NCBI GenBank assembly: GCA_047495785.1
Contig: JBLDXI010000026.1
Span: 124,001 to 188,000 of the forward strand
DNA length: 64,000 nucleotides
Direction: 5' to 3'
Source: Lepidodermella squamata
Lineage: Eukaryota; Animalia; Gastrotricha
Positions 1-54,309 of this stretch are shown here, in pieces. The notes below the pieces were generated by a model. That model was not told the DNA's origin and ran no database searches. It saw only the letters and a list, made by a program, of their open reading frames with translations. The stretch's first letter is position 1, and the number at the start of each line of letters is the position of its first letter. A program made the translations under genes and the position numbers.

Positions 1-2225
1 GTCATCCCTGACCTAGTTTCGGACAATTATCTGCTAAAAAGGGTGTCTAAATCGCTTTGAACGTCGCAGCTGAGCTCGATGTGGGTGTTATGGCTTTCGG
101 AATACCGTAGACTACCGTAATCGACCCCGCTGAACATTGTTATGACATTTTTTTCACGATGGGATTCATCCTTGACCTAGTTTCAGACAATTATCTGATG
201 ATGATCTCGGAATTTCGCGTCAAACTCACCTTGACGATGGCAGCTGAGCTCAATTTATGTGTTATGGCCGTCGGTATATCTTAAACTACCGTAATCGACC
301 CTGCTGGACATTGTTATGACATTTGTTTCATGATTGGATTCATCCCTGACCTAGTTTCGGACATTATTCTGTTCTTAGGTTGGGAATTTCGCGTCAAACC
401 CACTTTGAACGTCGCAGCTGAGCTCGATGTGGGTGTTATGGCTTTCGGAATACCGTAGACTACCGTAATCGACCCCGCTGAACATTGTTATGACATTTGT
501 TTCATGATTGGATTCATCCCTGACCTAGTTTCGGACATTATTCTGTTCTTAGGTTGGGAATTTCGCGTCAAACCCACTTTGAACGTCGCAGCTGAGCTCG
601 ATTTGGGTGTTATGGCCGCCGCGATGCCGTGAAATACCGTAATCGACCCTGCTGAAGATTGTTATGACATTTGTTTCATGATTGGATTCATCCCTGACCT
701 AGTTTCGGACATTATTCTGTTCTTAGGTTGGGAATTTCGCGTCAAACCCACTTTGAACGTCGCAGCTGAGCTCGATGTGGGTGTTATGGCTTTCGGAATA
801 CCGTAGACTACCGTAATCGACCCTGCTGAAGATTGTTATGACATTTGTTTCATGATTGGATTCATCCCTGACCTAGTTTCGGACATTATTCTGTTCTTAG
901 GTTGGGAATTTCGCGTCAAACCCACTTTGAACGTCGCAGCTGAGCTCGATGTGGGTGTTATGGCTTTCGGAATACCGTAGACTACCGTAATCGACCCTGC
1001 TGAAGATTGTTATGACATTTGTTTCATGATTGGATTCATCCCTGACCTAGTTTCGGACATTATTCTGTTCTTAGGTTGGGAATTTCGCGTCAAACCCACT
1101 TTGAACGTCGCAGCTGAGCTCGATGTGGGTGTTATGGCTTTCGGAATACCGTAGACTACCGTAATCGACCCCGCTGAACATTGTTATGACATTTGTTTCA
1201 TGATTGGATTCATCCCTGACCTAGTTTCGGACATTATTCTGTTCTTAGGTTGGGAATTTCGCGTCAAACCCACTTTGAACGTCGCAGCTGAGCTCGATGT
1301 GGGTGTTATGGCTTTCGGAATACCGTAGACTACCGTAATCGACCCCGCTGAACATTGTTATGACATTTGTTTCATGATTGGATTCATCCCTGACCTAGTT
1401 TCGGACATTATTCTGTTCTTAGGTTGGGAATTTCGCGTCAAACCCACTTTGAACGTCGCAGCTGAGCTCGATGTGGGTGTTATGGCTTTCGGAATACCGT
1501 AGACTACCGTAATCGACCCTGCTGAAGATTGTTATGACATTTGTTTCATGATTGGATTCATCCCTGACCTAGTTTCGGACATTATTCTGTTCTTAGGTTG
1601 GGAATTTCGCGTCAAACCCACTTTGAACGTCGCAGCTGAGCTCGATGTGGGTGTTATGGCTTTCGGAATACCGTAGACTACCGTAATCGACCCCGCTGAA
1701 CATTGTTATGACATTTGTTTCATGATTGGATTCATCCCTGACCTAGTTTCGGACATTATTCTGTTCTTAGGTTGGGAATTTCGCGTCAAACCCACTTTGA
1801 ACGTCGCAGCTGAGCTCGATGTGGGTGTTATGGCTTTCGGAATACCGTAGACTACCGTAATCGACCCCGCTGAACATTGTTATGACATTTGTTTCATGAT
1901 TGGATTCATCCCTGACCTAGTTTCGGACATTATTCTGTTCTTAGGTTGGGAATTTCGCGTCAAACCCACTTTGAACGTCGCAGCTGAGCTCGATTTGGGT
2001 GTTATGGCCGTCGCGATGCCGTAATCGACCCCGCTCAAGATTGTTATGAAATATTTTTCACGATTGGATTCATCTCTGAACTAGGTTCGAACATTTATCT
2101 GTTGGTGTTTTGGAATTTGACGTCAAACTCGCCTTGACAATTGCAGCAGAGCTATTGCAGGTGTTATGGCGGTCGCAATATCTTGAACTACCGTAATCGA
2201 CCCTGCTAAACATTGTTATGACATT
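1..2225 (+). repeat. Tandem array of ~13 units of 174 bp (left arm of the transposon)
   Basis: The motif CATCCCTGACCTAG (or a close variant) starts at 3, 167, 341, 515, 689, 863, 1037, 1211, 1385, 1559, 1733, 1907 and 2071. The period is 174, with two 164-bp units. Central units are nearly identical and edge units are diverged. Confidence 0.97.
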
Positions 2226-2814
2226 TACACTTGCTGAACATTTTTATGGCATACGATTCATTATGCAGCTATTCCCGACATATTTATAGACTCTGTAAAA
2301 TATGTTAGCCATAGCCCTCGTGCTCTCTGGAACGTCTGCTTAGCGTGCGTTGCAACATCACTTTCGCACGCACTTCTGTCCCACCTTTAGGATAAGAGTC
2401 TATTTGAGTCCATTCGAGACGAATCGATGGTATTATTCAATAATTTGACGCCTCGATATACATAACTTAAGTTTACGCCGTTAAAAGGGTCACCGGGTCT
2501 GGGACAACATGAACGAATGTTCGAACTCGCTGCAGGTGCATACCTAGATATAATTATTGCCAGTGAAACGATAATATGCGTTTATTTTTTGTTTTTTTTT
2601 GGTAAATATATTCCAATATGATGTGTGATTAAAATGAAAAAGAACCACGGAGGTCCTGTGACTATTAAAAATGTACCGCCGAAAGGTTATAGTATGGTAT
2701 AGGTGCTAAAAAGCGTGAGCAACCGTAGTCGTACCTTTGGAAAATTGATAGTATAATCATATTGCTACGTTCAAATGGAAACTTCGAGTTCCGAAAAAAA
2801 TCTATCAAATGATT

Positions 2815-5800
2815 TTATAGGTCAATGACGTAATCGCCGTCATTTATCGCTGGCTCCGCGTCACGTTCAGTTTGTTCCGGGGTTAGGGCAAGGACAACAT
2901 ATATGCCCAGCCATTTTTTGAGAAGGGCCGAATCCGGACGCAAATAACGCCGTATCTCTTTCCCCTCAGTAACCATTGTGTAATCGCCGGGAAAAGAGCC
3001 TGGCGTAAGAAGAGCATAATCTGAAGTGCCGGCTTTTCTTGCCACAACGGAAACGACTTCATAGCTGAGAAAGATGCTTTTATATCAGACAAAAAATCCC
3101 GAAATAAAATGTTACCTCGAATTCCGAAAATTTATGTTCGCGAGGTTGAGACATTGGTTGACCTGAATAGTCGCTTCGATTGCAATAATGACGACGGGGC
3201 ATGGCGTAATTCGGCCCTCATGCTGGTGCTTACTTGATGTTATCAATTTTTTCCCCTCGCATTTTAATCTGAAACATAATTCATTGCCCAAAAATAAAGG
3301 AGTCGAGTAATCATTTGCTAATTTTACCCGCTGGAGTCCGTAAATTGACAATCAGAGTAACTCTGCGAAAAACGGCTTGACAGCCTCTCCTCGATCTGGA
3401 GAGCATTTGGGAAGCTATAAAATTTAGTGGCTTATAAGCGCTATACAGTGTGTAGTATTTTTCCCACCTGTTTTGACCTGCCTCGATGGTTAGAAATGGA
3501 TTCGTGATGAGCTGCGGCTGCTCAGGCTGCAAACTGTTGCTCTGGCAGAAGCAGTTTTCGCACGCCCCCATTTTTCGCATTATACCGCACCCGTCAGTTG
3601 CGAAAATGCGCTCACATAGCTTACTGGGCGACAGGTCCTCCAAATTGTAGATCTTACCGCCATCATGTCGTAGAACTGCCAGCTCTGGGTACATGAGCTC
3701 AATGATGGAGCCGCGTCTAGCCCTTAGCTCAAATCGCGTGGCGCTGTTGTCGTTAACTGCCTCCAAATAAGAAGCCCATTTGCCTGGGCACAGTTTTCGG
3801 CAGATGGGAGCCATGCTCAAGGACAAATAGTCGAAAATTCGAGCGTTTTGTAAGTCAACCATTTGGCTTGCAAATCCAGAGTTTTGCAATTTATCCAACG
3901 CGCTAAGGCCCAGGGCATAGCTGATCTCCTGGCCCTCCGATGCCTCCGACGCCAGGTCGTTGAACTCCCAAGCACCCTCGCGCCTTTGGGCTTTTACCTC
4001 CTTCTCCGGACTTTTGGTAGCATTAGACTCCTTTGGAGCTTTGGGTTCCTTTGGAGCTTTGGTCTTCTTGGGAGCTTTAGGTTCCTTCGGAGCTTTGGTC
4101 TTCTTTGGAGCTTTGGGTTCCTTCGGAGCTTTGGTCTTCTTGGGAGCTTTGGGTTCCTTCGGAGCTTTGGTCTTCTTGGGAGCTTTGGGTTCCTTCGGAG
4201 CTTTGGTCTTCTTGGGAGCTTTGGGTTCCTTTAGATTTCCGCGAGGTGTCGGCGGGTTCACAGCGTTTGGTGGATCTAGAGCTGGCGAAAGCTTTGAAAG
4301 TTTCGGAAGCTGAGAGTCAATCTCGGGAAGTTCAGCTAAACCAGCTAGCCTGTTTCAGTAGGTTATTGAAAATGTCAAATTAACTTTGCATAAAAGAGCT
4401 ATTACGTAGAAAGAGGTCTTTTCTGGGTCACTGGTCGCTGTTCCAACCTGCTACTGCTGAGATCCATTGGCTCATCAGGGTAATCAGAGTAGGGAGGTGG
4501 GGGATCGTCTGTTAGGCAAACAATTAGCATGTTTTATGGTGAGCATAATACAAGACCTTGGGAAATCTCCGGAATGTCGATGGCGTCGGGCATTTGCGGC
4601 TCGATTTCGCTCAGGTCATTATCAAAATCATCGCCTTCAGCGATTATTGGCTCGATCAGACCTTTGCGCTTCGGCTGCGGACAACAGAAAAACAGTAAAT
4701 TGGGGTAATATTTTTCATACCCCTTCAAAATTCCTTTTTTCCTGTTAACCAACTGCCATTGAGGCAGACCATTTAACCCACAACGCAAGTCATCGATGAG
4801 ATATAGGTCGTTGTTGAATAGTCGAAGCGAAACATAATGGCCAATGTATTTGTCGGTCGCATCCAATCTGTCGTCCTCATTGCCGTAGTACCCGACGCCA
4901 TCGACTATTGTAGACGTGGGGTGTTGAAAGAGCGTGGCTGCGTGTAAGGAATACCTAATGGGTGATTTTTAAGTGGCTTATTCGAAAAAATATTAAAACA
5001 AACTCCAAGTCTCCCCATTCCAAAGTTTTCGGAGCGTTGTCTATGAACTGAGCGAAGGGTACTTCAAATCCTTGAAGAACCTCAATTGCGATGAAAGGAT
5101 ACGGCCTGGCCGAATGGTCATGCCGATGCGGGCCGGCAAGTGTGAAGCCCACGTGGCCGACTGTTTTGCAACTGAAACAATCCAGTGCTCCGCTAGGTTC
5201 CAGCAGCTCAGCTTTCAAACGATCGGAAAGGTTCAACAATGTTAATTCCAAGACTTCGCTCTTCTTAGGGCCGTCGTCCTCTCTGTTCAAATTTCAAATT
5301 TTAAAGAATTTACTTAGTTTAAAATAGCAAATTACACGGCAAAGTAAGTTCCCAAAATCGGGTTATAACGGCGTTTTGATAGTGGTTGATGTTTGCATGA
5401 AATACATCTCTGATAACTGCTCTCAAGGAAGCAATTTTCCAATTGACTCATGTGATGCAGCCACGCTGGAGCGCCGCCCTTACCGTCCAACATCGTTTCC
5501 GCAACGTAATTGGATTTTTTATCTTTGTCACTGAGGCTCTGCTCAATCGCATTTTGCGGGAAAACTTTCCGCATGTATTCGAACCGAGCTGACATCGCCA
5601 TGTAGCTTCCTGCTGAACGTTCCATTTGATTGGCTGTGCGAAGGCTTTGGAAAAAATAGCCGAATTCCTTTCCACAAAAACTGGCGGGGTCAATGTGACC
5701 CAAGCAGTTAACAATGCTGTCGAAGGCACACGTGTTTCTTGTGTCGAATTTTTCAGCCAACAAGCCACGCGGCGATAGGGACATCTGATGAAAGCCACCG

Positions 5801-8800
5801 CCATTCCGCATGAGAAAAATGCCGCCATCCAACTGTTCCGAATTGATTACCTCCATTTTGTCCGAATTAACGCCGCCAACTCTGTCTTTAGCTGCTGGTT
5901 CTTTGATCCGTGATTCTTTCTCAGAGTTAGCCATCGAGTGACCTACACCCTGACCATTGCCATCTTCGAACGAAGCAGTATGTGGGGAATCGGGAATGTT
6001 TGAACCGGTTTCTTCCTTCTCCATGGCCGCTCTGGCCAACTTTTCCCTAGCAGCAAATTTCGAGTATCTCGAATTTATCATTTTGTTCCGTTTTTTGGTC
6101 TTTGCAACAAGGGTTTCCTTGCGATGACTCCTGACCCCTTTTCCGAACTCCTCCACCACAGAATCTGGATCCAGCTGGGAATCAAGGTTTGCATCGACAT
6201 CAGAAGGGTCTTCGATAGGAACAACTAACAGCCGATTAGCAATTTCTTGTCTCAGCTTACGAACCACTTGGCAATGCGTGTCATTCTTCCGCCCGTCAAG
6301 ATCGTTGTTCTTCACGTCGTTCATAGTGAACTCCGCCAGCCCATTTGTGTAGTGTCCAGGTGCTTCCGGAACATTACTGAGAAAATTTTAGAAAACATTT
6401 TTGGAATAATAGCAACTTCAATTCTGCGAGAGAAATGAATGAATCTCATCAATCATTTCATCTGAAATTTCAAGTTTTCTACAGCATATCTCATTAACAC
6501 CTTCACTTCAAATACCCTTTATAGACTGACTACAACAACCCGAAAACCAACAATGTAGTTTGGGCGAATATAAATTCAGCGCCGTTGTGTGAAACATATT
6601 TTGGGCGAGAATCGCACCCCGTTTATGGAATTTAAGCAAACAAAGATATATGATCGAAAATCAATCAGATCAGAACAGCCGTCCTATACCGGAAAAAATC
6701 TGAAAAGTAAGAAATCGAGAAAAAATACGTGCCGCGTGAATGGATCTGGAAATATTTTCCGATTTCAGAGGCATTTTTCCGACGGTTGAAAGCGCGAAAT
6801 TAAAATTAATTCAAAATTAATTCAAAATAATAGCGCATAATGGAGAAGCCGCGAGGCCGTTAGGGTGCGGCCAAATGATCACCCTTTCAGGCCGATACAG
6901 CTGAAGTACGGCAAATAACACCACGTTGAAGGCGGATTTTCTCCAGCGGTGATTTCTGTGATTCCGGCGGTTGTAGCCTGCCATCTAAGCCCAATTGCCG
7001 CCCAATAATGGGTTGATCGTTCTAGGAATATGTCCTAATTTCGACACATTTTTTGAGCGCTCTATATAGTTTTTCTTATTATTTTTTACGTTTTTTGCCA
7101 CCCTGTTGTTTTTATTGCGGAAAATGGCTAAGAAAATTAAATTTTTTCAACAAATGCTGGAAAATATTGCAAACTCGTTACACCTCCGGTAGTACGGGCA
7201 GTACGGAGTCCGTGAAAATAAATAATCTCAAATAATAAAATGCTGGAGTCTCAAATTCAGTGCTGGAACTCTAAATATAATAGAGTGCGCACTGGGCACA
7301 CCAATTGGTAAGCTTACAAACGTTTAACCGCCATTCCTCGCACGAAAACTGCCGAGTAGCAAGGGAAAAGATGAATTAAATTTTTCATCACGGAATCCAT
7401 CGCGAACTTGGAGTGATGCTCATTGACCTCAGCGTTGTCTGCATTGAGTTCACCCTCGGCAGCTTCGATTTCGAGCAGTGCCGAATCGAAAATGGGGCGG
7501 AACATCGCGTAAAATCCGCTTAAGTCGATATACCTTTGAGATCGAAACTTACGCTTGAGCGATAATTCCTCATCGATTCCGAGTTTATCCTTGTCAACAA
7601 CTGGGCCCATGTTATCTGGCCAGTCGAATTCATTATCCTCAACGCTAGGCGGCGGCTCCGCATCACCTGGAATTTCCACCGGCTCAAGTGGTTGAATCAT
7701 CATTTCCTGTTGCTTTTGCTCAAAATCTGCTAGAGCTTGCGAGCAAAGATCGGTCTGAAAATTCGAGCAAAAAATGAGGACCATTAGCCTGAATACAATC
7801 CTGGCCTCCTTCATGTCCGGGCAGTATTGGAATGTAGCGAACGCTGTAAGAAAGAGACTTTTCGTTGCTTTCTTCACAGCTTTGCGGCCGCGACTTGACA
7901 GCATTACCGAAAGAGCCTTTTGAAGATGTGCAGAGCATAAAATGATCAGGATCAGATTATTTGGGATCACTTGGATTACATCGCCGCCTTTCAGCGACTC
8001 GAATAAGATAATCAAAGTTCGCTTCAGCGAATGATTGTTGAACACTTTACTGACGGCTTGCATTAAGCAATACGAGTGGTCAACTACGACCCCATACGGC
8101 AGAGATATAGAGCCGTAATGTGTCCAATCTGCTTTCCAAAAGCCGAGCAAATACTGAAAAGCGACGGATCTTTGGTCAGATGTCAACAAGTCAGCATGCC
8201 GAACTTTGGGCCCTTCCAGGACTGGCGAAAATGACACGACGGGCATATACGCGACTTTTTTCCCAGTCAACCAGTCGTTTTTTACTGGCCCCATTGTGAT
8301 GTCAATACCAAACAAATAGAATCCTTTTGAATCTTGGGCAGTTTGTTTAAGCAGCTGTATCTGTTTGCCGAAATAATTCGCCGAATGAAGAGGCCTTACG
8401 CCGTAGGCGCGGATGAATTCCCCTTCTTTGAACTTGTTCGGATTCTCGGGATCATCGGGATTTTCGACACGTTGGCAATACAACTCTAACACCATATCAA
8501 CTTCGTCGTTAATATCTTTGCGAGCGCGAAGCCGATCCTCGGATCCAATTTTGGCGAAAGTCGAGCTATTTGGCAACTTTGTTTGAATATGCTCATGTGG
8601 TTTGGCTGGAGGAACATTGGCCTTGTCTGCCGCAGCCTTCAACGCCGAATACAAGCTTAGTCGAACTTTTGCAGGCTTTTCGTATCTCAGCCGACCAGCT
8701 ATAGCTTCACGTGCTTTTCCCGTGATTCGACGTGGCTTTGGCTTTCCAGCAACATGATTGATGGGCTTGTCCGGGTCCGGAATCAGTTCAATTTTGATAG

Positions 8801-9884
8801 AATCAATTTCCGAGTTATTACTGCAGAGGTCAGATTTCAAAGAGAATTGACGACACCCTCGACAGCTGCAGTACGCACGTCCAGCCAAGTCGTTTGTCTT
8901 TTTTCGGAGCTTAACCCACCGGTAATTAATAGTGCAATCCCCGCTGATTGCAGAAACTTTCGAGTCGAATAGATTAGCCCATTCGCCTTTCAAAGCGCCC
9001 TTATTGTCCACTTCAATCGACGCGAGCTCGGCCTTCGAAATATAAAATGTCAAATTGCTCGAAAGGCTGCTATCTGGCGAGACAGTAGCAGAATCCTTCT
9101 TGCCAACGGGTTTAGGTTGGAACAAGTGTGACATATGGCGCCTCATGAAAGTGTACAAATAGTTTCGATTTTCTTGGGAACTTAGATTGCATATTCGCCC
9201 AGCTATTCGCCCGAAAATGCCATCTTCCGGGGTTGGACCTGAAATAAAGAGCATTCATTTACTTGGAAGGATAGCTGTAGCTGAATTCGGCTGGGTCGGC
9301 TCAAATCGGCTGGGTCGGCACACTATTACTGATAATTCTTACGCTTCTCTATCATATTAGGATATAATGTAGAGCTAACCTCTGAGAGCTCGGGTTACAC
9401 TGTTTAATTTCCATCAATTGTTTCAAATAGGAAAAATAGGTTAAAATAGGAAAATAGGAAAAGTTCCCAGGCTAGATTTCTTAGCCCAATATTCTTTTCT
9501 CATAATAGGTAATCAAGCTATATGTATACGCAAATACTGGCTTTACAACAAAATGCGTCTTCTATTTTAAAAATTTGAGCAGAAGCTCCCGCCGACCCTC
9601 CTCGGGATGGTGAAAACCGGCTATGTCCGAAAATAAATAAAAAATCGAAATAATTATTACGAATAAAAATCAATAATGGTATTCTGATTAATCTTGCTGC
9701 TTCCACTTATATCAAGGCTCAGGTAAAATTAAGTAAAATACAGCGGCTATTATGCCCAACACCTATAAACCTATAAAACGTACACACCTGTTCCAGCAGG
9801 TATCAGTGGCTCAGATACCATGTAATCGCTAATCAACTTCATCAGCGTGGCTTTATCAATATCAGTTAGAGCAATCGAAGCCAT
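2815..9884 (-). CDS. Spliced MULE/NOF-like DDE transposase fused to a USP-like cysteine protease and a second inactive USP-like domain (~1,736 aa, 10 exons)
   Basis: Hand-built exons, all GT-AG and phase-compatible: 9884-9788, 9238-7318, 6376-5336, 5282-5004, 4954-4557, 4508-4406, 4349-3468, 3414-3328, 3268-3116, 3064-2815 (5211 nt). Transposase motifs: GIDITMG (D1), VVVDHS (D2), CSAH (MULE CxxH), YTNGLAE (E). Protease motifs: NTCAFDS Cys-box, CISC/CFSC, and YSLHAA...GHYV...IDD His-box. Confidence 0.85.
4033..4232 (-). repeat. Coding 36-bp (2x18-bp) minisatellite encoding (KEPKAPKKTKAP)n
   Basis: Repeated ggagctttgggttccttc / ggagctttggtcttcttg, about 5.5 units, in frame in ORF 3311-4261. 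Confidence 0.95.
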
Positions 9885-10726: not shown

Positions 10727-11266
10727 CGTTGTCCGGAACTAGGTCAAGGATGAATCCAATCGTGAAAAGAATGTCATAACAATTTTCACCGGGGTCGATT
10801 ACGGTAGTTCAAGGTATTGCGAAGGCCATAACACTTGAAATGACCGTAGCTGCGATCGTCAAGGTGAGTTTGACTCCAGATTCCCAACCTACCAACAGGT
10901 AATTGTCCGAAACTAGGTTAGTGATGACTCCAATCATGGAACAAATGTCATAACAATGTCCAGCAGGGTCGATTACGGTAGTTTAAGATATACCGACGGC
11001 CATAACACATAAATTGAGCTCAGCTGCCATCGTCAAGGTGAGTTTGACGCGAAATTCCGAGATCATCATCAGATAATTGTCTGAAACTAGGTCAAGGATG
11101 AATCCCATCGTGAAAAAAATGTCATAACAATGTTCAGCGGGGTCGATTACGGTAGTCTACGGTATTCCGAAAGCCATAACACCCACATCGAGCTCAGCTG
11201 CGACGTTCAAAGCGATTTAGACACCCTTTTTAGCAGATAATTGTCCGAAACTAGGTCAGGGATGAC
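10727..11266 (-). repeat. ~3 inverted copies of the 174-bp unit (right arm of the transposon)
   Basis: Reverse complement of the left array. The outer two units mirror positions 1-327; the inner unit is diverged. Confidence 0.95.
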
Positions 11267-13841
11267 TCGGATCAGAAAATTGAAGTCAAAATCAGACTCA
11301 GCAGGGTCGATAACACCCATAACAATTATCACGGCACTCGAATAGTGCATGTCAAGCACAGCTGCTAAGAAAAACACGATGTGGACACCCTGAAACGTGA
11401 ATTCAGCAGCGATATTCGCAGGTGAGCGACAGGTGAGTGTTATATGGGCAAATTTGATGTCAATCGATTGCGGAGGTCCATAACAACTTTGTTACAAAGC
11501 GGCAACTCTATAACAGTGATAGTTTTCTCAGCTGCTAAATTTCGCTGCTGACTTCAAGGCAGTCAAAAATCCCAATTTAGGGCGGGCTGCTCTAAACAAA
11601 ACGCATATTTGAAACATTAATGCATTCGAAAATGATTCATATTCCTTTTTGAGAGCAGATAAAATCATATCTGCTTCTTGCTTCTGATAACGAAGTATTT
11701 TATGGAGGCTCAGGGAAAACGTTATTCGAACTAATTGCCCTGTGACCCGAAGAACTTTTCTAGGCTCTTCAAAATGTTTTCTGGAGCTGAGTGAAACGTC
11801 CCATATTTTCCCAAATTCTTTCATGCTTGCAATACCACACTGCAGGATTCCGGCAGCCCGCGTTTTATCAATAGCTTTTTTTGTAATAGCACTACACATA
11901 ATTTTGAATGCAGCGATAAATTATGTGTACCTTCATGCTATTATAACAAAATACAAAAAAACTGGCAATCAATAGAGTAAATTCTGCATTGCGTAAATAG
12001 TTGCGGCTATGTAGTATATAGCCCATCAAGTAAAGACATACTCACATTTTTTACAATATCAAACATATATAATAAGTTGCATCACTTCGGAGGTGATTCA
12101 TAAATAATAGCATGAGCTTTCAGAATTTTCTTACGCATCATTATGATGACGCTTGCAAAAAGTTTAATCAACCCCGGTCATTTTCACAGTCACCGTTTCC
12201 CCATCTACGCAGTGACGCAAATTGGTAAGATCTTTATCATCAGAGGTATAGGTAGTGGGAATAAAAGCAAAAAAGTGCGGCATTTTTATTAGGCGCGATT
12301 ATTACAACATATATACCTCGACATCTTTCAGCCATGAAATACAAAGGCACGTTTTTTTTCTTTCTACTTCCACTTGATATCATGCCTGCCAATTTATCCC
12401 CACCTGAGGTCGTTTTTTTTGTTTTCAGGTCTACGCAGTTATTAGCTCTTATGATTGGCCACGTTGGATTCACACTTAGGTATACAACATATACAGCATA
12501 TATTTCAGCGGCTTAGGGGCAGTTAGATGAGCTTGACTATCATGCATTGTGTTGTAGCCGAAAATCTCAAACAAAACCCCAGCTTTTCTTACATACATGC
12601 TATATACCTACCTATATAGGAGTCGACAAAACTCAGTATTAGTATCAGGTTATACGTATAGAGCATCTGGTCGAGTGCGAAAATATTTTTCTCATCTCGA
12701 CAGTAAAGATATCAACATCACAGCAGGTGATCACGCCTACTAGCCAACCACGCCTCTATTTCTTCTCTGTTTGAGCACGCATATAGCTTCATTACCTATT
12801 TATCGAAAAATTCTCATAAACGAAAATAACAATAGCTGCTTCCGGGAAATTGCAATAATGCTATCGAATATTTGGAATGAATCATTTTTATTTCTCCCTC
12901 CTTTGCGATTTCTTTATATAGAGGAAATGTACTCATTCGAACCGTTTTACCGTAAATAATCCTAAATTCGGACCCTTTGAGCTTCGACTCTGAAAATTGA
13001 GCATACCTGATAAAAATTTGTCACATGTCACAGAAAAACAGGCTTTCCAGCGGTACCAAATTTGCCAATCCAGTGACAACCAACCGCACGGTGGGATCGA
13101 TTTGATATTGTCTTAAATTTCAAGCCCGTGGGAGATGAGACTGGAAAACGGACCGGAATGAAGCCCTTTTCATGAGCTTTTAAAATAGCTCAAATGGAAG
13201 TGGATTAGTTATAACAATATGAATATATTCATGAAGTGTCTTTAAACTAGGAACATCTTAGCTCCGCGCAAAAAAATACAGAAAAATGAGCAGTTGGTGT
13301 AAGATTGGGATACATCAAACCCAATTTTTCTTTATTTTTTTGCAACAAATTTGTTAATTTAAATGGCATCTGAATATTAATTAGCACCTCATGAATATTC
13401 ACATTTTTTGCCTATTAAACTTTCTGAGTCTGTCCGAGTTGCACTTTTCATTTTTGGCTAATCTGAACCCAAACTTGGAGCTAAAAATAGTTCGGGCGCG
13501 TGCGAATTATTTTTTGTTTCAACTCAAATTCGCTTCAAACCGCGCGCAACTTCTGATTAACATTGTACTTTCATTTACCATCGATTTTTGAAAAAATGCC
13601 CTAGCTCGATTGGCTGAAAGTTTGGAGCCGGCGCCAAAAATTTATAGATTTCTTCCCTTATTTTTCTAGATCAAGGGGATCTCCTAAATTTACCTGTCGA
13701 TCCAATTTCAACGGGTGAAGGTTTTTTATTTTCTTTTATTTTTTGGACGAAATCCAAATTTAAGCAAATTTATTAACGTATTTTGTTCAAAGTTAGGACG
13801 CATCACTGTACTCTGTGGAATTTTTTTTATAGATTTTTTCA

Positions 13842-16800
13842 ATGCAAAAATCAATATCCTATCAGACTTTCGCGAGATTTCAGAGGCGAGACGCAGTTTC
13901 TCTTCCGTCATCTTACCTCGCTATAAACCGTCTGGATGATGGATCTGTAACAGTCTCAGAAAATACTCATCATCACAACATACATCGCGCTTCGAGTGTC
14001 CCAACTTCTCCACCAGCTGGAAATTTAGAGTCCATCATCGCATTCGCTGATGATAATGCCAGCGAATTTCCATTCAACGATTTCGACGACGCCCTATTCG
14101 ACCGCGAATCGAATCACCGGACTAGTCAAACGTCGGCTACGTCGTTTTTCGAAGAAATCCACGTCTGCTTCGGCGAAGATCACGACCCATTTGTCGGCAT
14201 TCTCAATGAAGCCGGGTCGAAACATGCGTGTTGTCCTTTCAAATCCTTCCTAAAATTGCCACCTGAAGACAACGATAATTATCGCAAATTTTACACGATT
14301 TTCGGTAAAAGAATGCGGCAATTCGGCCAGATGACCGACGACGATGTTCGGTCGACTCTTTTCGACTATTGGTGCTGGAATTGGGGCGTAGGCCTGGACG
14401 GGCTTCGAGATTACCTTCAAGACGCTGTTGCGAATTACCAAGACGAAGACGGTGTTCATTGGCGGTTCGACGAATGTTCGGTTTGCCTCGCCGAGTTTCG
14501 CTTCGTGCGACGCCCGTCTTGCTGTAGAAAAGCTATCTGCTACCCCTGTTGGTCTCAATACGTCAAAACAACTGCTGCTAACTCGATGTCGGTACATTTA
14601 ACTGGCATGTATGATTTACACTGCTTCGGCTGTGAAAAGTTTGTGCCGTACAGCGAGGCACTCGGCTCAATCGAACCCGAAGATTTGAACCTGGTCCGAC
14701 CGCCCGGCCATTCGTCGTGTTCAGTCGCAAGGTGTCCAGTTTGCCTTAAAGTCCCTCCGCCTATCATGGTGTCTGGAAAATCGAGTCATGCGAAGCTATT
14801 GGCGAAGCTGAGGAAAAAGCGAGGCGGCCGGCCGTTGTTATGTGAACGGTGTAGAACTACATATTGCTGCATTTGTGGTATGGCTGATCACCCTAATGTC
14901 TCATGCAGTCAGCTGACAACTTCGGAGAAAGGCCTGTTAACATGGTCAAAGCAAAGAAGTGTCGCTCGATCTGATTACCAGGTAAACTCCTATAATAGCC
15001 ACTTGGACCTTAACTACCTCAAATTCGTGGAAAATTGCAAGAAATTGCCTGACAAGTTTTGTCAATTTTTTTAGAAAATATTTCAAGGGAACCGAATGCC
15101 TATTACCTATTGCGGAACCTAGAGGCAAACTTATGAAAGGTGTCATTTTCGAATATTTTGTTTAAATCATGACTGTATCTCTTTCTGAAAATGAGGACTA
15201 TAGGCCTTATACACAAAATTCCAGAGAATTTTAACGTAATTTATTTGAATTTGTTGAATTAATTGTGAAATTCCAGAAACTTCAGAAATGAAATTTTTTG
15301 CGAATTAATTATTCAAAATTTGGTTCCGCTACAGGCAATTTGGGTTCCACGTAAACTAAGGCCCATTTTCCCGTCTCGCATTGAAAGGCATTGTCCTGGC
15401 ATAACTTTATAGAACGATTAAGTAATAATAATAGAATCTAGGTGAAACTCTTTTTCGACTATGTAGTAGCTATAGGGTTTGTGCACTTTACTTCCATTTT
15501 CTGCACCCTAGCCTCCGATTAGAGTGCGTCTGAAAGCAGCTTCCCCTCTGAATGACCATGGCCAGCAGGGTGTCTCAATTGCAAACATGAATTTCACAAT
15601 TAATTCAACAAATTCAAATAAATTACGTTAAACCTTCGACTAGTTATATTCAGAGTTGCTAAAATTGTAGATGAGAACATCTCAGCACGATTTCACCATC
15701 CTTAAAACAATGGATTACGATTTCAAAGAAGAAATGGCATTTTCTTCGGAATTATTAAGGTAGTGAAGTCATACACCAGAAAAAACACCCCAATTAGGGG
15801 GATAAAAAGTTGGGCTTTTAGCTTGTGAAATCCCCTCTATTAGGGCCCTGTGAGTATCTTAATTCACCGATTTTCAAAATCTATCTAAATTCATGCTTGA
15901 AAATCTCTTTCTGGTGCAGAAAAAGATTTTCCAAAATTAAATTGATTCTTAATACAAGATTTATTATTAGGCAGGACAAAACGTTGTTCAAATTAAAAAA
16001 AAGATATTTAGATGAATTTTTTATGGATGTGGCTATTCGGACACAAAATTGTGTGTCACGTGTCACGCAATGGCTATTCGAACACAGTGTGTGTGCGTGA
16101 CTGGCTACTCGAACACAAGTGGGCGTGAAGTGGTGTGTGCGCGCATTCGGCTATTTGAACACAGCATCCTAAGTCACCTGCTAATCACCGAAATCCGGAT
16201 TTTAACAACTTTTCGTTAGTCCGGAAAATGCTAAAACTGCGAAAATTCGAAATACCAGCATAACGGGAAAATACCCGGTCCAAAATTCGAGCGCGCATTA
16301 GCATCAGCAATAAAGGCGATATAGCAATAAAGCAATAAAGGCCGCTCTCTTTGATTTTGGGTCGCGGCCATCGAGTCTGGCCGAAATTCCGATAAAAGGC
16401 TATTTGCGAGGTGCGGCGTGATTGCAACTGATAATTAGCGATTTGATAGCTCGAACTTGACTCCGCCGGACGTCAGCTTTCGGTTTTATTTCAATTTTTT
16501 ATTTGATCTTATGATAATTTTTTAATAATTTTACTTGATTTTCATCTTATTTTTGAATTTTCAGAACGCTCGCCGGTGTCCGAAATGCAAAATTCGAGTG
16601 GCCCACAGCGGTGGTTGTTCGCACATGACATGCCCGTGCGGTGCCGAGTGGTGCTACGTCTGCGGGCGCAAGTACCTGAAAAATCTCGCCTTCATCTTTC
16701 CAAGCCACATGAGCAATCGCATGCTGCCGCTAGTCTCATGCCCGAAAATGTGGTCATCAACCCCGAAACGCCTCGCTGTTCACTCGCTCGTCGGCCTCGG

Positions 16801-16909
16801 CATCGTAGCAACCGGCGTGCCTCTCGCTATCGCTCTTACCCCTATCGTGCTTCCAATATTAGGTAGTTTCATTCTGGCTCGAAAGCTGAAGCGCCGTCGC
16901 CGGCATTGA
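13842..16909 (+). CDS. RBR-type E3 ubiquitin ligase (RING1-IBR-RING2 plus C-terminal TM), RNF217-like, paralog A; true start uncertain
   Basis: Exon 13842-14981 (CAG|GTAAAC) carries RING1 (CSVC...CC...CYPC...CFGC) and IBR (CPVC...CERC...CCIC...H...C). Exon 16565-16909 carries RING2 CPKC...GGCSHMTC.C...CYVC, then HMSN and a hydrophobic tail. Confidence 0.85.
15230..15632. mobile_element. Intronic MITE-like element with 44-bp perfect inverted repeats
   Basis: tttaacgtaatttatttgaatttgttgaattaattgtgaaattc at 15230-15273 is inverted at 15589-15632. Confidence 0.6.
16030..16163 (+). repeat. Four spaced copies of GGCTATTCGAACACA-like motif in intron
   Basis: Copies near 16031, 16072, 16103 and 16149, separated by GT-rich spacers. 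Confidence 0.7.
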
Positions 16910-18369: not shown

Positions 18370-21300
18370 ATGAAAAAAAGCAGCAGCGATACGAGCAGCG
18401 CGCTGGCCGAAGAAGCCGTCGCCAATTCGCTGCTCGATGACGATATTTTCCTGAAAGACGGCTGCGACTGGCACTGCCAGTGCCAACCTCTTCATCATCA
18501 CCTATGCAACACCCACTCGCAAAGAACCGTGCAAACCTGGCTCAGCAATTCGGTCTCAAACTGCGACGAACCGGAACCGCCGCTTGTGATGAAGAAATCG
18601 CGGCCAAGCGTGACTTTTAAGGAGGATGTCATGCTATTCGACGAAATGGATGATGACGACGGCGAGGAGAACCCGTTCTGCGCATTATACCGCGAATTTT
18701 ACCCGACTATGGACGACATTCAAAGATCGAAGAGTCTAACGGCTTCGAAATCGGCCGGCAGTCAGTTTTTCCTAACAAATGATCAGGGCGTGAAAATGTT
18801 CGATGGCGCTAGGTTCCACCTATGCTCCTCGTCAGATGCTGAACCTTTTGTAGGGGTTCTAACGATAAAAGCGTCTCTTCTCGCTTGCTGTCCTTTAAAA
18901 TCGTTTGTCATGCTGACCCCGGACCATGGTGGCTACAAAACGGCATTCACGCCCTTTGGACGGAAATTACTACACGCCTGTCAGCAACAAGGCTACGATC
19001 TGAGATTTGCCCTAAGCGAGGAGTTGTTTTCATCATGGTGGCGAGATTTGATAGGCGGGCTTGATTTAACCAGCTTCCTTAAACGAGCAGTCGAGCCATA
19101 CGTCGATCAATGCGGCGTCACGTGGATGTTTGACGAATGTGCTGTGTGCCTATCGCCGTGTCGTTTTGTTCGAAAGTCGTCGTGTTGTTCGAAGGCAATA
19201 TGCAATTCTTGCTGGGTCGATTACGTCCGGATATCAGCCGGAAATTTGCCAGCTTTCTACGCATCAGGCATGTACGATTTGCACTGCTATGGCTGTGATA
19301 AAATAGTTCCGTATGACGAGGTGCTAACGTCGCTTGACCCGGATGTGGTTGCCCTGATTAGACCACCCTGCGACTCTCACGCAAGGTGCCCGCGATGTCT
19401 GCAACCGCCTTCCCCCGTAAAACTGTCGAGCAATAATAATGGTGCTATTTTGCGAAAGGTGCGTAAGAAAAAAGGCGGCCAGCCGGTGAGTTGCACGCGC
19501 TGTTTGACGTCCTACTGTGGAACCTGTGGCTGTGATGTTCACCCGAAAAAATCGTGCCAGCAAATTCTGAGCTCAGATGATTCACTTCAGAGCTGGATGA
19601 AGGCACCTAATCCGGAAAGTCCGGAATATCCGGTGAGTTACTAGGCCATGAGAATTTCCAATAGAAAAATTGTCAAAATCCGCAAAAATTCAAGCATTAT
19701 TTCGAATAATTTCTCAAATCATCGGATTTAAAGTATTTCATTTTACCCGATGTTAGCGAATTATTCTTGAAAATTAATCGTATTATTCGGTGCGTGACCC
19801 ATATGTTACGCGAGCAAAGAAAATACCCGGAAAAGGGTTCAGAAACTCTAGAATGAGAGACGAAGTCTCATCTCATGGCCAGAAAAATTTTAGAAAAATT
19901 AAAAAAAATCGCAAGAATAGTAATCAGGTTTGTATAACTTGATAAAATGGGATTAAAAAATCCGGCGAAATTTTGTTCACCGGTGTAATATCCCGAAAAT
20001 TACCGAACCAGTTACCATTGGGGTTTTCCTGGTTTTCTCAATTAAATTTGTCATTTCTTTATTTATTTAGTATTTTATTTATTTCTTCAGTGAAATCGCG
20101 GATAAAAGATGAAATACTCTCTCGGTAGATTTAATTTAATAAAATTAGTTGAATTTCGTGCAAAAAGTTGGCAAATCAAAAAATAGTTCCGCAACTTCTG
20201 GGACACGCACCAATATTACCTTCATTATTTATGGTTTTTAGCTTGAGAAAATCTCGATTTTTTTTTCATTTCTTACTATACCATTTAAACATATTACTCT
20301 AGGCGAAGCTCACATAATAACATAATAACATAATAAGAAACCGCTTATTTAAGGGGGATTTTTTAATTTATACAGTGAGCACCGAAGGTGCGAAAACCTT
20401 GCCCCGCCGTGAAACGCGAGCGCAGCGAGCATCATGGGGCAAGGTTTTCGCCCGAGCAAAGCGAGGGGACGCTGATTTGATCGAGCGAAGCGAGAAAAAG
20501 CACTTGAAACTCTTCGAGCGAAGCGAGATCACTTTTCTCGTTTCAGCATGAAATTCGTTAAAAAATGCCGTTTTCATCGTACAGTTTTAAGGTTGATTTT
20601 TTAAAGTCGCATTTCACACCAGAAAATCACCTATTATGCACTTTTTTTCGTGCACAGTGCCTAATATTAGTGTGCACGACTGTTACCAGGCCATCGTGCA
20701 CACGCACTAGGTCATTCACACATGCCAGTACTTTAAAATTTCAAAACGCTATAATTCTCCCAATTTTAATTTAAAAAAATTGAAAATTTGCAGCCACATA
20801 ATATTCGCCAAGCGAAGACTAACAAATTTTACCCGATGAAAATCGAGTGAAAAATCAGCGAGATAAAAATTATATAAAATTCAGCCCATAATTAACAGCA
20901 ATAATATAGTCGGCCACGCTAATTACCTGAGTGCGCGCGTATTCCGAAATATAGGTCAAGGCGCCAGAGAAATTTTTTCACCTATTTTTCATCATTTCAT
21001 TTCAAATTTGTAGAGATTGACCGAAGGAATAAATAGCCGTGAAATATGCAAATTCCAAATTACGAAAAAATAGATAACTAGGATGCCTTTCTGACCCATC
21101 CTTCTCTTTCTACACTTTTGATCTATAGTCATCAAGGCCGAGAAGCGTCCATTTGTTTCTGGTTAAATTTATTTTAATTTATATGAAAATTACAAGTATT
21201 AAAAATAACACCCATTTTTCATTTGATAAGACATCAATAGACCTGTCGCTTATTCGCTGTGTGGGTGTGCTTACGTCTAGCTAATTTTTCCCATTTTCAG

Positions 21301-38670: not shown

Positions 38671-40030
38671 CTAATGTTGCGAGTTCATGTCGTAAATTTC
38701 GTTGAACAGCCTGCTTTCAGGTAGTGCCGAGCCGCATCGATCGAAAACCCGGCAAAAAGCCTGGTAACGGCGTATAGCCGCATCGCAGAATACGCGAATG
38801 GCTCGCGACATTTCAGCCGAGCGCAGCTCAGCTTGCTTCGGGCCGAATTTCTGGATCAAATGCGCCCGCACTATGGCTTCGATTTGCTGGTGAGTCTTGG
38901 CGAAATCTGACAATCCGCTCAGCTTTGTACTGTCTTCGCCTGAAACGTCAAACAAAAATTAAATTTTGAAAAAAACGAAGTTTTGATTAGCCAACTCACC
39001 TTGAAAAACTAAAAGCGCCATCATCAGGGAAAACTCTGCTGACGATGGTTGCCACTCGTTAAGCATTTCCCTTATTACCTTGAGCTCAGATTGAATGTAC
39101 TGAAAATTAGAGGTTGATTAGGTTCTATTTTACGGATGAAAATGAAATCAGACTTACAGCAAACTCAGGGTAGTATTGCGTCAGCTTCGAAAAATTTTCT
39201 TTGCTCATGCCTAGGGCGTAAGGCTCGGCGTGATTCGAGCATTCAGCTACGACAATTCGGCTCAGACAACTCGCGAAAACACTGCAGCGATCTTTAAGAT
39301 TCATGTCTCGGAAACCAGGCAACGATCTTAGGTAATCCTTCAAGCATATCGCGCTCCTTTCCATGTGGGACATGACCTCTTGCCAAGCTTCAGCCGCATT
39401 GCTGAAGCTATTTTCTTGGGTCATTTGCCTCAAGGGTAGCTGGAAATTAAAAATTTAAGCTTGGAAATTAAAAAAAAATTAATTGCTCACCTTGCTCATA
39501 TCATCATGAAATTTATTCGCAGCATTGATGTAAATTTGAAGATTTTGCTCCAGTGTTGGGTAGTCGAAAGCTAGTTCTGACGTTGATGGGGATAGGGTGG
39601 GCGAACTTCCAGCGCTTGATTCTTCATACGGAGTGTCATCAGCACTGCACGATTCGCCGCTTTTCGACTCACGAGGCGACTTTTTCGACGGCGAACCCAT
39701 GCCGGCATCTCGGCACTTCGCGAAACGGCATGACGGGCACATGAAACGCCACGTGGTACCCGACCACATGACAACGGCCGTTTTCGCCGAGGGTGATGAA
39801 CTTTCATCGCTTGATACCAAACAATCGTGGCCGCCGGAGAAGCAAGTCAGGGCCGACTCGCGGTGCCGATTTCGCAGGTAAAATCGCTTGCATGCCTCGC
39901 AAACCAAAGCGCCACAGCGCCTTTTGCGTGAAGTAGCAATACCACAAACCTTTAAACAAAATTATTAAGGAGGATTTTTTAAATGAAGTGGATATTTTAC
40001 CTGGCAGTTGACGATGCTGTAACTTTTCAT
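38671..40030 (-). CDS. Divergent nuclear hormone receptor #1 (P-box CEACKR)
   Basis: MKSYSIVNCQ|VCGIATSRKRRCGALVCEACKRFYLR...CPSCRFAKC...GM; LBD with LRSLPGF...DR; short introns. Confidence 0.85.
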
Positions 40031-41050
40031 TTGGAAGGGCTGTTTGAGGAACTGATGCGATGCTAACACGGCTGGGCATCTTTTATGCAGGTCTGAGACA
40101 CGCGAACCGAGTGGGCGACTTCGAAGTAATGCTTTCAACGTGATAAAAACCGCATTCTAGCGTGTCGGATTTCTTCGCATAACTATGTTCGAAGATGTCA
40201 GAGGCAAAAAATAATTGCTAAGGTGCTATTGATAAAGCTAATTATACGAAAAGTCGTGCGATCACTTCCTGGTGAATCTGTCTTCAAGAATTTAAAAGGA
40301 ATTTCAAAACATTTTTCCGTCGATTTTGATGCACGAATAAAGAAATGAATCTAATTATTTAATTACGCTGACGCCTTTCTAGGCATGTCGTGGGTAAAAA
40401 TATTTTACTGCGATATCACGTGTTAGTACAAATTTATTCCCGTAATAAATCGGCCACATTCTTCGCAAGAGATCATAAAATAAGTGTAATTATCTTTCCC
40501 GGGTAGGCGATGCGCATCACGCGCAATTACTGGGCTAAAAATTGCGTGGAATTTTTTGATTACGCGATCAAATATAGGCAATTTTTACTCATCTTTCCTA
40601 TTTTCTTGTAAAACCCGAGGTATGAAAATAATATCTTCCGCAAGTAAAGTTGCAGCTAATACCCCGAATTAGGACAACATTAGATACCCTTTGCATACAG
40701 CCTCTATTTAGGGTTCCAGCTGGAAATGAAGCCTCGTCCGTGCATATTAGACAATATAGGTATTGTTAGTTACACCTCTAAATTTTCTATTCGTCCTGCA
40801 TTCTTAAATTTATTTAATCGTTTTCTTCTCTACCGAGCCAGTTTCGCCCGAAAGCTTTATTGGATCAGTCGCCTAAGCCGAGCTCAGTACGTGATAGCTA
40901 GCTAGAGCTTGTCATTCGATCACGCAACTGCCATTCAAGTATTTACTCAGCGTGCCTATGACTTTCAGAGTGCTTTTCGAGCAGCCTGATCGAGCTCATT
41001 TCATATTTTATTTTCACAATTTGAAAGCAAGTTCTACTTAACTCTCAATT

Positions 41051-41351
41051 ATGACAAAGCTCGTTCTTTTTCTCGCCATTGTGGTAAGAATATCTTTGAA
41101 TAATCTTCGATATAAATTACCTTTTATAGGCCGTTGTTGCCGTAGTCACTCTAGCAGAGGAGAACAAGTTTGGAAAGGTGTGCACTCAGGATGGAAAAAC
41201 CGGTTATTTTTGGCGAAATCCAAAGAGTGGATCATGGGAATGCTATACGAGTGACGAGAAGTTATGCAATACCAGCACGGGCAAGCCTGGCTTTGTGCAG
41301 AGATACAGGCGTACAACGTTTTGCTCAGAGTTCATCCCAATCCGCGGCTGA
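41051..41351 (+). CDS. Small secreted 4-Cys peptide precursor (84 aa, 2 exons), not recovered by the ORF track
   Basis: Exons 41051-41083 (GTG|GTAAGA) and 41130-41351 give MTKLVLFLAIVAVVAVVTLA-EENKFGKVCTQDGKTGYFWRNPKSGSWECYTSDEKLCNTSTGKPGFVQRYRRTTFCSEFIPIRG*. Confidence 0.75.
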
Positions 41352-41638
41352 TAATGCTTGTATGGAATTGAGACGAGAGAGGATGAGATGCGAAGCGCAC
41401 AAGATAGCGGTTGTAGTACTCGGTGATTTCGTTGATAATTCCATGATGAAATAAAATTAATAGACAATCGCTACCCATATAATTTCTTCGCAATTTTAGT
41501 AAATATATTCGGAGTAAATATACCTATACATACTGCGATTTCTGCACACAAAAATAAATGAAAAAATTCGTCGTTTTGAAGACTTTGGCTATGGCTGCGA
41601 TTTAAATAATTCATACAAACCTCAAAAAAACGTGGTGT

Positions 41639-41785
41639 CACAGGGTTTATCTAGCCACCCTCAACCCAGCGCCAAAATGTGGCTACCCCTCCCTAAGTTT
41701 CAAGCTTTTGGGCTATTTTCAGCTGTTGAGGTCTATTTCGCGAGTATCCGCACCCCCAATTTCAAAAGGCTGGATAAGCCCGTTG
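41639..41785. mobile_element. Short MITE-like element (~145 bp)
   Basis: gggtttatctagcc and ggctggataagccc form an imperfect inverted pair; gtggtgt occurs on both flanks. Confidence 0.5.
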
Positions 41786-41820
41786 TGGTGTATATCCTTA
41801 CTTGAATACGCATTTTTGAC

Positions 41821-42203
41821 CAACAGGCTTCTGCTCCAGAAATTCGATTCGGTGAAGTCGATCTGCCGCCACTTGACCACGTGAAGATCCTGGGAGTCTA
41901 TCTGGACTCAAAGCTCACCATGGAAAAGCACGTCGATCATCTGATCAAAGCCGCAAGAAGTGGTACCTACGCACTACGTAAAGCGGCTCGGCACACCGAC
42001 CTGAAGACTCGAACAATGATGTACGACGGCATCATCGGGTCGAAGTTCAACTACTGCGACGCCGTCATCGATCAGGGCTGCAAGACCCAGCTGGATCGAC
42101 TTCAACACGCGCAAAACAAAGCCGTTCGTGCCGTTCTCGACGTCAGTCCTGACGTGCCCGCCGATGAAGTTCTCGTGCGATTGCGATGGGTGAATCTGCA
42201 AGG
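41821..42203 (+). mobile_element. Truncated non-LTR retrotransposon (CR1/L2-like) ORF2 C-terminal fragment
   Basis: KILGVYLDSKLTMEKHV...LRK...SKFNYC...LQHAQNKAVRAVL...LRW matches the RT thumb/C-terminal region of CR1/L2-type LINEs. Confidence 0.8.
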
Positions 42204-42991: not shown

Positions 42992-42998
42992 TATAAAA
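42992..42998 (+). promoter_or_regulatory. Candidate TATA box of the GSSGP-repeat gene
   Basis: gggTATAAAAtagg about 95 bp upstream of the ATG at 43087. Confidence 0.5.
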
Positions 42999-43086
42999 TA
43001 GGCGACAATGTTTGAAAAATGAATAGAATTGTTGGATTTTAAAGAAACCTTCTCCACATTGGAGTTCATACTGTTAATTCCGAGTA

Positions 43087-46055: not shown

Positions 46056-46324
46056 TTTGTGCCTTGCAGCTGTTCTGTTCGCGATTTTGGAAAAAATCCT
46101 CGGAATTAGGCGCTCAAGCATCAAATGACAAGTTGATGTTCTGTATCAGCGTATGTCAAGTCTGAGTGATATCGATTTTTCACATAGTTGAGAAGCCTTT
46201 CAAGTAATGCAACTTTTTGTAAGGAAAAAGCATTCCCCCGCCTACTCCATGCGACGAAAAATGTTTCCACCGTACAGATTTATTATTACTGATGAAAACA
46301 GGAAAAAACACTTTCACCCTAATT

Positions 46325-54160: not shown

Positions 54161-54309
54161 TTTTTGAGAAAATGCAATTATGTCTGGAAACGGAGTGTGC
54201 AAAATAGCGAAATCTGAACCTTTCCTCGCGAAATATCGATCGTCGAATCACTTTCAATTAAGCATCAATCCGTTAAATTTATTAAAACATAACATTAGCA
54301 GTTTCTAGT

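What the first reader, a model, noticed from the sequence alone, without database searches (positions are those of the whole stretch)
2815..9884. One giant spliced transposon protein: MULE transposase + active-looking USP-like protease + dead duplicate protease
Seen: about seven separate track ORFs join through nine phase-compatible GT-AG introns (48-59 bp, except 549 and 941 bp) into one stop-free 1,736-aa frame. The catalytic Glu motif (YTNGLAE) appears only after splicing. Established: D..D..CxxH..E is the MULE/Foldback (NOF-type) signature, and NTC / GHY / DD boxes with two CxxC pairs are the USP (peptidase C19-like) signature. Other MULEs are known to carry Ulp1-type proteases. Inference: this is an autonomous element whose transposase carries its own ubiquitin or Ubl-removing enzyme, possibly to escape degradation or to erase chromatin silencing marks.
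Basis: partly seen in the sequence, partly recalled or inferred. Interest (0 to 1): 0.85.

Follow-up and report, generated by a model that had tools for sequence, protein, structure and literature searches.

The report
Foldback transposase with USP-fold protease tail
An intact, probably recent cut-and-paste jumping gene of the Rehavkus/Foldback group encodes one long spliced protein whose tail is very likely a ubiquitin-protease-fold enzyme followed by a dead copy; relatives in scallop, sea cucumber and other animals carry the same tail, whose nearest look-alike is the uncharacterised human protein C14orf28.

Summary
Observation confirmed: ten exons on the minus strand, nine GT-AG introns, one stop-free 1,736-aa frame. 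Exon 2 has 56 distant homologues; D345, D419 and C467xxH470 are invariant in the 23 aligned, and E688 aligns after intron 2. The family motifs match published Rehavkus transposases. Of the 56, 13 carry a divergent Cys-box tail, three a canonical USP Cys box and one Ulp1. A complete scallop tail models as a USP fold (Foldseek E 4e-9; Z 11.6 to USPL1); its best Atlas match is C14orf28 (TM 0.67). The window's own tail could not be folded. It is tied to these by an ordered five-box match (z 5.4) and a shared phase-2 intron before the box-5 Tyr. The second copy lacks Cys, His and Asp. No RNA or activity evidence; exon 1 is unsupported. Deubiquitinases on transposons are a known theme, and this scan already noted sister elements in this genome. 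New here: the Rehavkus placement, the fold, the family-wide spread and the C14orf28 lead.

The parts
1..2280 (.). Left inverted arm, 12.6 tandem 174-bp units; the window begins inside it, so the terminus is not visible
   Evidence: nine units 93-100% identical to each other
10730..11592 (.). Right inverted arm: about 3 clear and 2 degenerate 174-bp units; candidate terminus at 11592 (GAGCAGCC read inward), flank TAAACAAAA
   Evidence: 1-327 and 11266-10940 are 100% complementary, 93% over 537 nt
9788..9884 (-). Exon 1 (aa 1-32), least certain; alternative in-frame ATG at 9254
7318..9238 (-). Exon 2 (aa 33-672): N-terminal helical motif shared with homologues (aa 37-68), C-x-C-x4-C...H module, D345 (8303-8301), D419 (8081-8079), C467xxH470 (7937-7926)
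5336..6376 (-). Exon 3 (aa 673-1019): catalytic E688 (6333-6331), basic linker, protease Cys box with C889 (5730-5728), first CxxC
5004..5282 (-). Exon 4 (aa 1020-1112): second CxxC and USP box-4-like strand
4557..4954 (-). Exon 5 (aa 1113-1245): box-5 Tyr, H1152 (4839-4837), D1167 (4794-4792), closing strand
4406..4508 (-). Exon 6 (aa 1246-1279), acidic/proline linker
   Evidence: only
3468..4349 (-). Exon 7 (aa 1280-1573): Lys/Pro/Ala minisatellite (4028-4231, 18/36-bp units) and first half of the dead protease copy (Cys replaced by R1450)
3328..3414 (-). Exon 8 (aa 1574-1602), dead copy
3116..3268 (-). Exon 9 (aa 1603-1653), dead copy; keeps the family C-x-G motif
2815..3064 (-). Exon 10 (aa 1654-1736), dead copy: His replaced by I1708, Asp box absent; stop codon
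2581..2586 (-). Only AATAAA between the stop codon and the left arm (candidate polyadenylation signal)

Best explanation
A ~12-kb Rehavkus/Foldback-type (Mutator-related) DNA transposon with a single spliced gene. The N-terminal 720 aa bind the repeated 174-bp units of the arms and cut and paste with the D345/D419/E688 centre (family shown; chemistry from established knowledge of DDE transposases). Fused behind it is a compact USP-fold cysteine protease of the C14orf28/USPL1/USP54-like divergent branch, triad C889-H1152-D1167 (fold shown for a homologue, inferred for this copy). It most likely removes ubiquitin from the transposase itself, or from proteins and chromatin at the donor and target sites, which protects the transposase from degradation and eases repair after the cut (inferred). 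An old DNA-level duplication, introns included, made a second copy that lost all three catalytic residues but is kept in frame, probably as a binding module (duplication and inactivation shown; role inferred). Layered confidence: Rehavkus-type element 0.9; USP-fold tail 0.85; catalytically active 0.7; ubiquitin rather than another modifier about 0.7 of that.
For: Inverted modular arms. 56 homologues of exon 2 with invariant D, D, CxxH; the Glu region aligns at E 0.004. Rehavkus-3_TC in the supplement of PMC6446971 shows the same LYFDATGS and TNNAIERYF motifs as the homologue consensus. Homologue loci L007 and L009 also have long modular arms. The homologue tail profile hits USP54 at E 4.7e-5, then USP15 and USPL1. 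The model of the Argopecten tail (pLDDT 69.5) hits only USP-family structures in its top 50 by Foldseek, with Z 11.6/10.4/10.3 to USPL1, CYLD, USP54. The window's exon-3 half has UCH-clan clusters as all its named Atlas neighbours (0.86, a lead only). Boxes built from homologues alone pick C889, box 4, box 5, H1152 and D1167 in order (z 5.35, 0 of 300 shuffles). A phase-2 intron directly before the box-5 Tyr is shared by window introns 4 and 9 and four homologue loci. The tail slot holds divergent USP, canonical USP or Ulp1 in different family members, which points to a job on ubiquitin-like modifiers.
Against: No RNA, no activity, no fold of the window's own tail. Pfam and PDB sequence searches of its exons are blank. 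Profile comparisons of single exons with the homologue tail are not significant; pairwise z is only 3.6. The spacing limits of the five-box test were set knowing this sequence. The Asn five residues before the catalytic Cys in typical USPs is Asp here and variable in the family. The homologue model has rmsd 5-6.5 A to USPs and a poorly modelled fingers region. The left end and the target-site duplication could not be checked.
Confidence: 0.5

Rival explanations
1. Same element and fold, but the protease removes SUMO (or NEDD8 or another modifier), as USPL1 does, and so counters SUMO-dependent transposon silencing.
For: The best structural match of the homologue tail is USPL1, a SUMO isopeptidase (Z 11.6); one family member has Ulp1 in the same slot (P0013); Ulp1 is the usual protease on Mutator elements (PMC2836005).
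Against: The best sequence-profile hit is USP54, a K63 deubiquitinase (PMC12037411); three members carry a canonical USP Cys box; USPL1's Z lead over CYLD and USP54 is only about 1.
Confidence: 0.2
2. The protease mainly cuts its own polyprotein (as viral papain-like proteases do), releasing the transposase from the tail at the disordered linkers.
For: A 1,736-aa chain with long low-complexity linkers between domains; viral papain-like proteases share the fold (Z 7-8).
Against: Cellular USPs rank above all viral proteases; both zinc-finger pairs used for ubiquitin binding in USPs are present; I noticed no conserved cleavage motif in the family alignment (not tested formally).
Confidence: 0.1
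3. Both tail domains are non-catalytic binding modules or decaying cargo; the triad in copy 1 is a leftover.
For: Extreme divergence from the family (long branch); atypical residue at the oxyanion position; one contig joint suggests a derivative lacking the Cys-box region (5177 to 6183; only 27 bases on the short side).
Against: Copy 1 keeps exactly Cys, His and Asp while only about 21% identical to copy 2, which lost all three; no variant in any copy-1 exon; the Cys box is invariant in 14 homologue tails.
Confidence: 0.1
4. The tail is real but is made as a separate or alternatively spliced product, not as one 1,736-aa fusion.
For: No RNA evidence; introns 1, 5 and 6 have no homology support.
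Against: The transposase Glu and the protease Cys lie in one open exon (exon 3), as they do in the homologues; the RefSeq model XP_069136756.1 is a single fusion. This rival can only apply to the dead copy or to the start site.
Confidence: 0.1

Closest known systems
Rehavkus / Foldback (FB-NOF-type) transposons, sister group of MULEs (PMC6446971; 10.1101/2024.12.02.626372)
   Same: Long inverted arms with tandem units, 5-18 kb size range, one ORF, C-terminal minisatellite, DATG-type first Asp, CxxH and TNxxxE motifs.
   Different: No PHD finger in this copy (several homologues have one); no USP-fold tail is described for the group in the papers I could search; very long branch (22% best identity). 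The link to Drosophila NOF is from memory and was not tested.
Ulp1-bearing Mutator and Ginger1 elements; OTU, VTD and UCH domains of Helitron-like elements; the C19-bearing IS5-like transposase of Trichomonas (PMC2836005, PMC9741609, PMC11417382)
   Same: A ubiquitin-family isopeptidase fused to, or carried with, a transposase; Helitron VTD domains are proven deubiquitinases, and inactive copies occur.
   Different: Different transposase, and a divergent USP fold that Pfam does not detect; an active plus a dead copy in tandem.
C14orf28 / DRIP1 (PMC10318531; 10.1101/2024.05.15.594113)
   Same: Nearest cluster to the scallop tail by features (0.96; 199 of 256 shared) and by shape (TM 0.67 over 249 residues); similar size; published as a papain-like deubiquitinase-fold protein of unknown function.
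   Different: A stand-alone chordate gene without a transposase. No alignment or tree with it could be made here, and the match is for the scallop homologue, not the window's own tail.
USPL1, USP54/USP53, CYLD (divergent USPs)
   Same: Top structural and profile matches of the homologue tail.
   Different: 12-14% identity; substrate cannot be transferred from them.

Membership tests
Rehavkus/Foldback-type MULE | DDE triad with CxxH motif | tested here: met
   D345, D419, C467, H470 invariant in 23 sequences; E688 aligns to the family Glu
Rehavkus/Foldback-type MULE | Long terminal inverted repeats with tandem units | tested here: met
Rehavkus/Foldback-type MULE | 9-bp target-site duplication | not testable with these tools
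   left terminus lies before position 1; the right flank would be TAAACAAAA
Rehavkus/Foldback-type MULE | Transposase similarity to named Rehavkus elements | tested here: inconclusive
   by eye only: Rehavkus-3_TC and -1_HR motifs match the homologue consensus; no scored comparison or tree with Repbase sequences
Rehavkus/Foldback-type MULE | PHD finger | tested here: not met
   none in the model or upstream frames; present in homologues P0001, P0014. So I call it Rehavkus-type, not a textbook Rehavkus element
Rehavkus/Foldback-type MULE | C-terminal minisatellite | tested here: met
   4029-4231, 18/36-bp period
Canonical MULE (Pfam MULE domain) | Match to the Pfam MULE transposase model | tested here: not met
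   neither exon 2 nor any of 22 homologues matches
RNase H-like DDE fold | Three-dimensional fold of the core | tested here: inconclusive
   single-sequence model pLDDT 36.9; fold search meaningless
USP / peptidase C19 | Cys, His, Asp boxes in USP order | tested here: met
   (z 5.35), copy 1 only
USP / peptidase C19 | Match to Pfam UCH | tested here: not met
   blank for window exons and the scallop tail; three other homologues have a canonical Cys box (UCH E 3e-4 and 2e-3 for two, below the cut-off). Filed as USP-fold, not as C19
USP / peptidase C19 | Thumb-palm-fingers fold | tested here: inconclusive
   met for the homologue P0061; not folded for the window's own spliced tail
USP / peptidase C19 | Isopeptidase activity on ubiquitin | not testable with these tools
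   needs an assay
C14orf28 family | Sequence homology and shared clade | tested here: inconclusive
   feature and shape matches of the homologue only; no alignment or tree

The most novel reading that the evidence does not exclude
Rehavkus-type transposases across marine invertebrates carry an unrecognised, active branch of USP-fold isopeptidases, and the chordate gene C14orf28 is a domesticated copy of this transposon protease. In this genome the branch has gained a dead second copy that may set chain-linkage or substrate choice.
Probability: 0.25. Interest if true: 0.8.

Novelty: new variant of a known kind. Interest (0 to 1): 0.56.

Why it matters
It adds a cut-and-paste lineage and a Pfam-invisible protease branch to the pattern that unrelated transposons keep recruiting ubiquitin/SUMO-removing enzymes. 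One transposase family holds Ulp1, canonical USP or divergent USP in the same slot, so the long-open question of what these proteases do for transposition can be tested by swapping or mutating one domain in a single element. The C14orf28 match gives a testable origin and an activity hypothesis for an uncharacterised human gene; no paper in the library links it to transposons.

Tried and rejected
A 28-row alignment was discarded because exon pieces were misplaced; a 12-row one with correct placement was used. The tree cannot place the window element or order the tail swaps. Rejected: separate bacterial-style ORFs (introns are AT-rich, GT-AG and shared with homologues); a domesticated host gene (327 bp of perfect complementarity between the arms); a prokaryotic origin of homologues labelled Sedimenticola (their tails end at a spliceosomal donor, so these are probably animal contigs in a bacterial bin); retrocopy origin of the second domain (it keeps introns).

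Full report
Observation. Ten minus-strand exons from 9884 to 2815 join through nine GT-AG introns (549, 941 and seven of 48-59 bp) into a stop-free 1,736-aa frame. Introns are AT-rich against the exons. The one public DNA run that holds the stretch (possibly the source sample, so not independent) shows 5 substitutions in 3,839 exon bases against 30 in 2,062 non-exon bases, with all seven indels outside exons. That covers exons 1-6 only, and repeats inside the long introns may inflate the contrast. No RNA run exists. Exon 1 is the weak point: homology starts at aa 37, and an in-frame ATG at 9254 would serve. The Glu motif lies wholly in exon 3; splicing connects it rather than creating it.

Surroundings. 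The gene sits between long inverted arms built of a 174-bp unit: 12.6 units on the left (the window starts inside the arm) and about five, decaying outwards, on the right, ending near 11592. Positions 1-327 and 11266-10940 are perfectly complementary; the inner parts fall to 74-85%. Nine left units are 93-100% identical, a recent tandem expansion. Unequal tandem arms are the Foldback build; tandem units in Rehavkus arms are described in Tribolium (10.1101/2024.12.02.626372). If the arms are symmetric the element is about 12 kb (inference). The target-site duplication cannot be checked.

Transposase. Exon 2 finds 56 distant relatives (best E 3e-14, 23-35% identity). D345, D419, C467 and H470 are invariant in the 23 aligned. 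The start of exon 3 aligns with the family's TNxxVENW Glu motif (E 0.004), which supports intron 2. Named relatives come from Holothuria leucospilota and Argopecten irradians; two loci have their own long modular arms (L007, L009). None matches Pfam MULE. Rehavkus-3_TC and -1_HR in the supplement of PMC6446971 show the same motifs by eye, and that paper lists long arms, a 9-bp duplication, a PHD finger and a C-terminal minisatellite for the group. The window copy has the minisatellite but no PHD finger, and is a very long branch. I call it Rehavkus-type.

Protease tail in the family. After the transposase, 13 of the 56 relatives carry a WGG...NTCxxDN box followed by a zinc-type Cys pair, three carry a canonical USP Cys box and one a Ulp1 domain. 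Most gene calls stop at an intron there. The RefSeq model XP_069136756.1 (P0061, found) gives a complete tail with Cys, His and Asp boxes, and downstream exons with His and Asp boxes were found in four more loci. A profile of these pieces hits USP54 (E 4.7e-5), then USP15 and USPL1. A model of the scallop tail (pLDDT 69.5, pTM 0.66) matches only USP-family structures in the top 50 by Foldseek (best E 3.8e-9) and USPL1, CYLD and USP54 at Z 11.6, 10.4 and 10.3, rmsd 5-6.5 A. Its nearest Atlas cluster by shape is C14orf28 (TM 0.67), also second by features (0.96). C14orf28 is published as a deubiquitinase-fold protein of unknown function (PMC10318531); no paper in the library mentions it with transposons.

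Is the window's tail the same domain? Direct sequence tests are weak or blank. Four other lines agree. It sits in the same slot of a homologous transposase, in the same open exon as the catalytic Glu. Five short profiles made from homologues alone, chained in USP order, land on C889, box 4, the box-5 Tyr, H1152 and D1167 (z 5.35, 0 of 300 shuffles; the transposase control scores below its shuffles; spacing limits were set knowing this sequence). All named Atlas neighbours of the exon-3 half are UCH-clan (0.86, a lead). Intron positions match: a phase-2 acceptor directly before the box-5 Tyr occurs in window introns 4 and 9 and in four of five homologue loci, and a phase-2 donor follows the first Cys pair (19 codons after the last Cys in the window, 12-15 in nine loci). 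The homologue exons are my predictions, except for P0061.

Second copy. aa 1434-1716 aligns to aa 873-1158 at 21% identity (z 5.8, 0 of 2,000 shuffles). Cys is replaced by Arg, His by Ile, and the Asp box is missing. It shares introns 3 and 4 with copy 1 (as 7 and 9), and its intron 8 lies two codons from a family intron before the C-x-G motif that copy 1 lacks. So the duplication was at DNA level and is old, yet the frame is still open over four exons, which suggests it is kept for a non-catalytic role (inference).

How it most likely works. The transposase binds the repeated arm units and cuts and pastes (established for DDE enzymes). The tail is most likely an active isopeptidase acting close to the transposase: removing ubiquitin from it or from nearby chromatin and repair proteins (about 0.5), or removing SUMO or another modifier (0.2). 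Self-processing, an inert tail and a split transcript are each about 0.1. That Ulp1, canonical USP and divergent USP fill one slot argues for a modifier-removing job but does not fix the substrate.

Known versus new. Ulp1 and OTU on Mutator and Ginger elements, and a C19 domain on a Trichomonas transposase, were reported in 2010 (PMC2836005). Helitron VTD domains are proven deubiquitinases (PMC9741609). UCH domains are catalogued in Helitron-like elements (PMC11417382). This scan has already noted sister elements with the same tail on other pieces of this genome (unchecked by me). New here are the Rehavkus placement, the spread across marine invertebrates, the fold evidence and the C14orf28 lead. 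Verdict: new variant of a known kind, interest 0.56.

Steps left out and handling. I did build the joined frame inside local scripts to check it, and compared joined stretches there with each other and with sequences already fetched. The folded protein is a database record with separate exon pieces as alignment rows. No human sequence was fetched; C14orf28 appears only as an Atlas cluster name and in papers. The host was not identified; short introns and the neighbouring genes suggest a small invertebrate.

Noticed in passing
window 5177-6183: One public contig joins 5177 to 6183, a ~1-kb deletion that would remove the protease Cys box and shift the frame; only 27 bases on the short side, so tentative.
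   Followed up: partly
window 7241-7280 and 9579-9609: Both long introns hold short pieces of repeats that are abundant elsewhere in the genome (loose ends), probably why these two introns are long.
   Followed up: no
window 13842-16909 and 18370-19644: Two neighbouring paralogues with a Cys/His pattern like RING-between-RING ubiquitin ligases, next to the element; Pfam was blank for the first ORF.
   Followed up: no
window 57364-58958: Tandem pair of intron-free ~223-aa ORFs that look like bacterial-type GNAT acetyltransferases (by eye); possible horizontal transfer.
   Followed up: no
window 39479-57246: Cluster of divergent C4 zinc-finger, nuclear-receptor-like genes (also scan note s1-387857).
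   Followed up: no
window 20290-20589 and 63665-63964; 60327-60732: A 98% identical dispersed repeat pair, and a small element with 113-bp inverted arms.
   Followed up: no
window 43087-44001: Secreted-looking protein made of a 63-bp (21-aa) Gly/Ser/basic repeat.
   Followed up: no
L007:10062-22550: In the scallop element the arm's tandem unit is read as the N-terminal repeats of RefSeq protein XP_069136756.1; arms about 2.1 kb, 93% complementary.
   Followed up: partly
L020 (JBEVXV010000341.1) and P0024: Family members annotated as Sedimenticola MAG proteins; the L020 tail ends at a spliceosomal donor, so probably animal DNA in a bacterial bin.
   Followed up: partly
L008:19172-19603 and L012:13432-13896: Macro-domain ORFs 5-6 kb downstream of two unrelated family members on the same strand; may be further cargo.
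   Followed up: no
Atlas clusters: Unnamed Basidiomycota and rotifer clusters and giant-virus USP clusters resemble the tail; whether they are transposon-borne is unknown.
   Followed up: no
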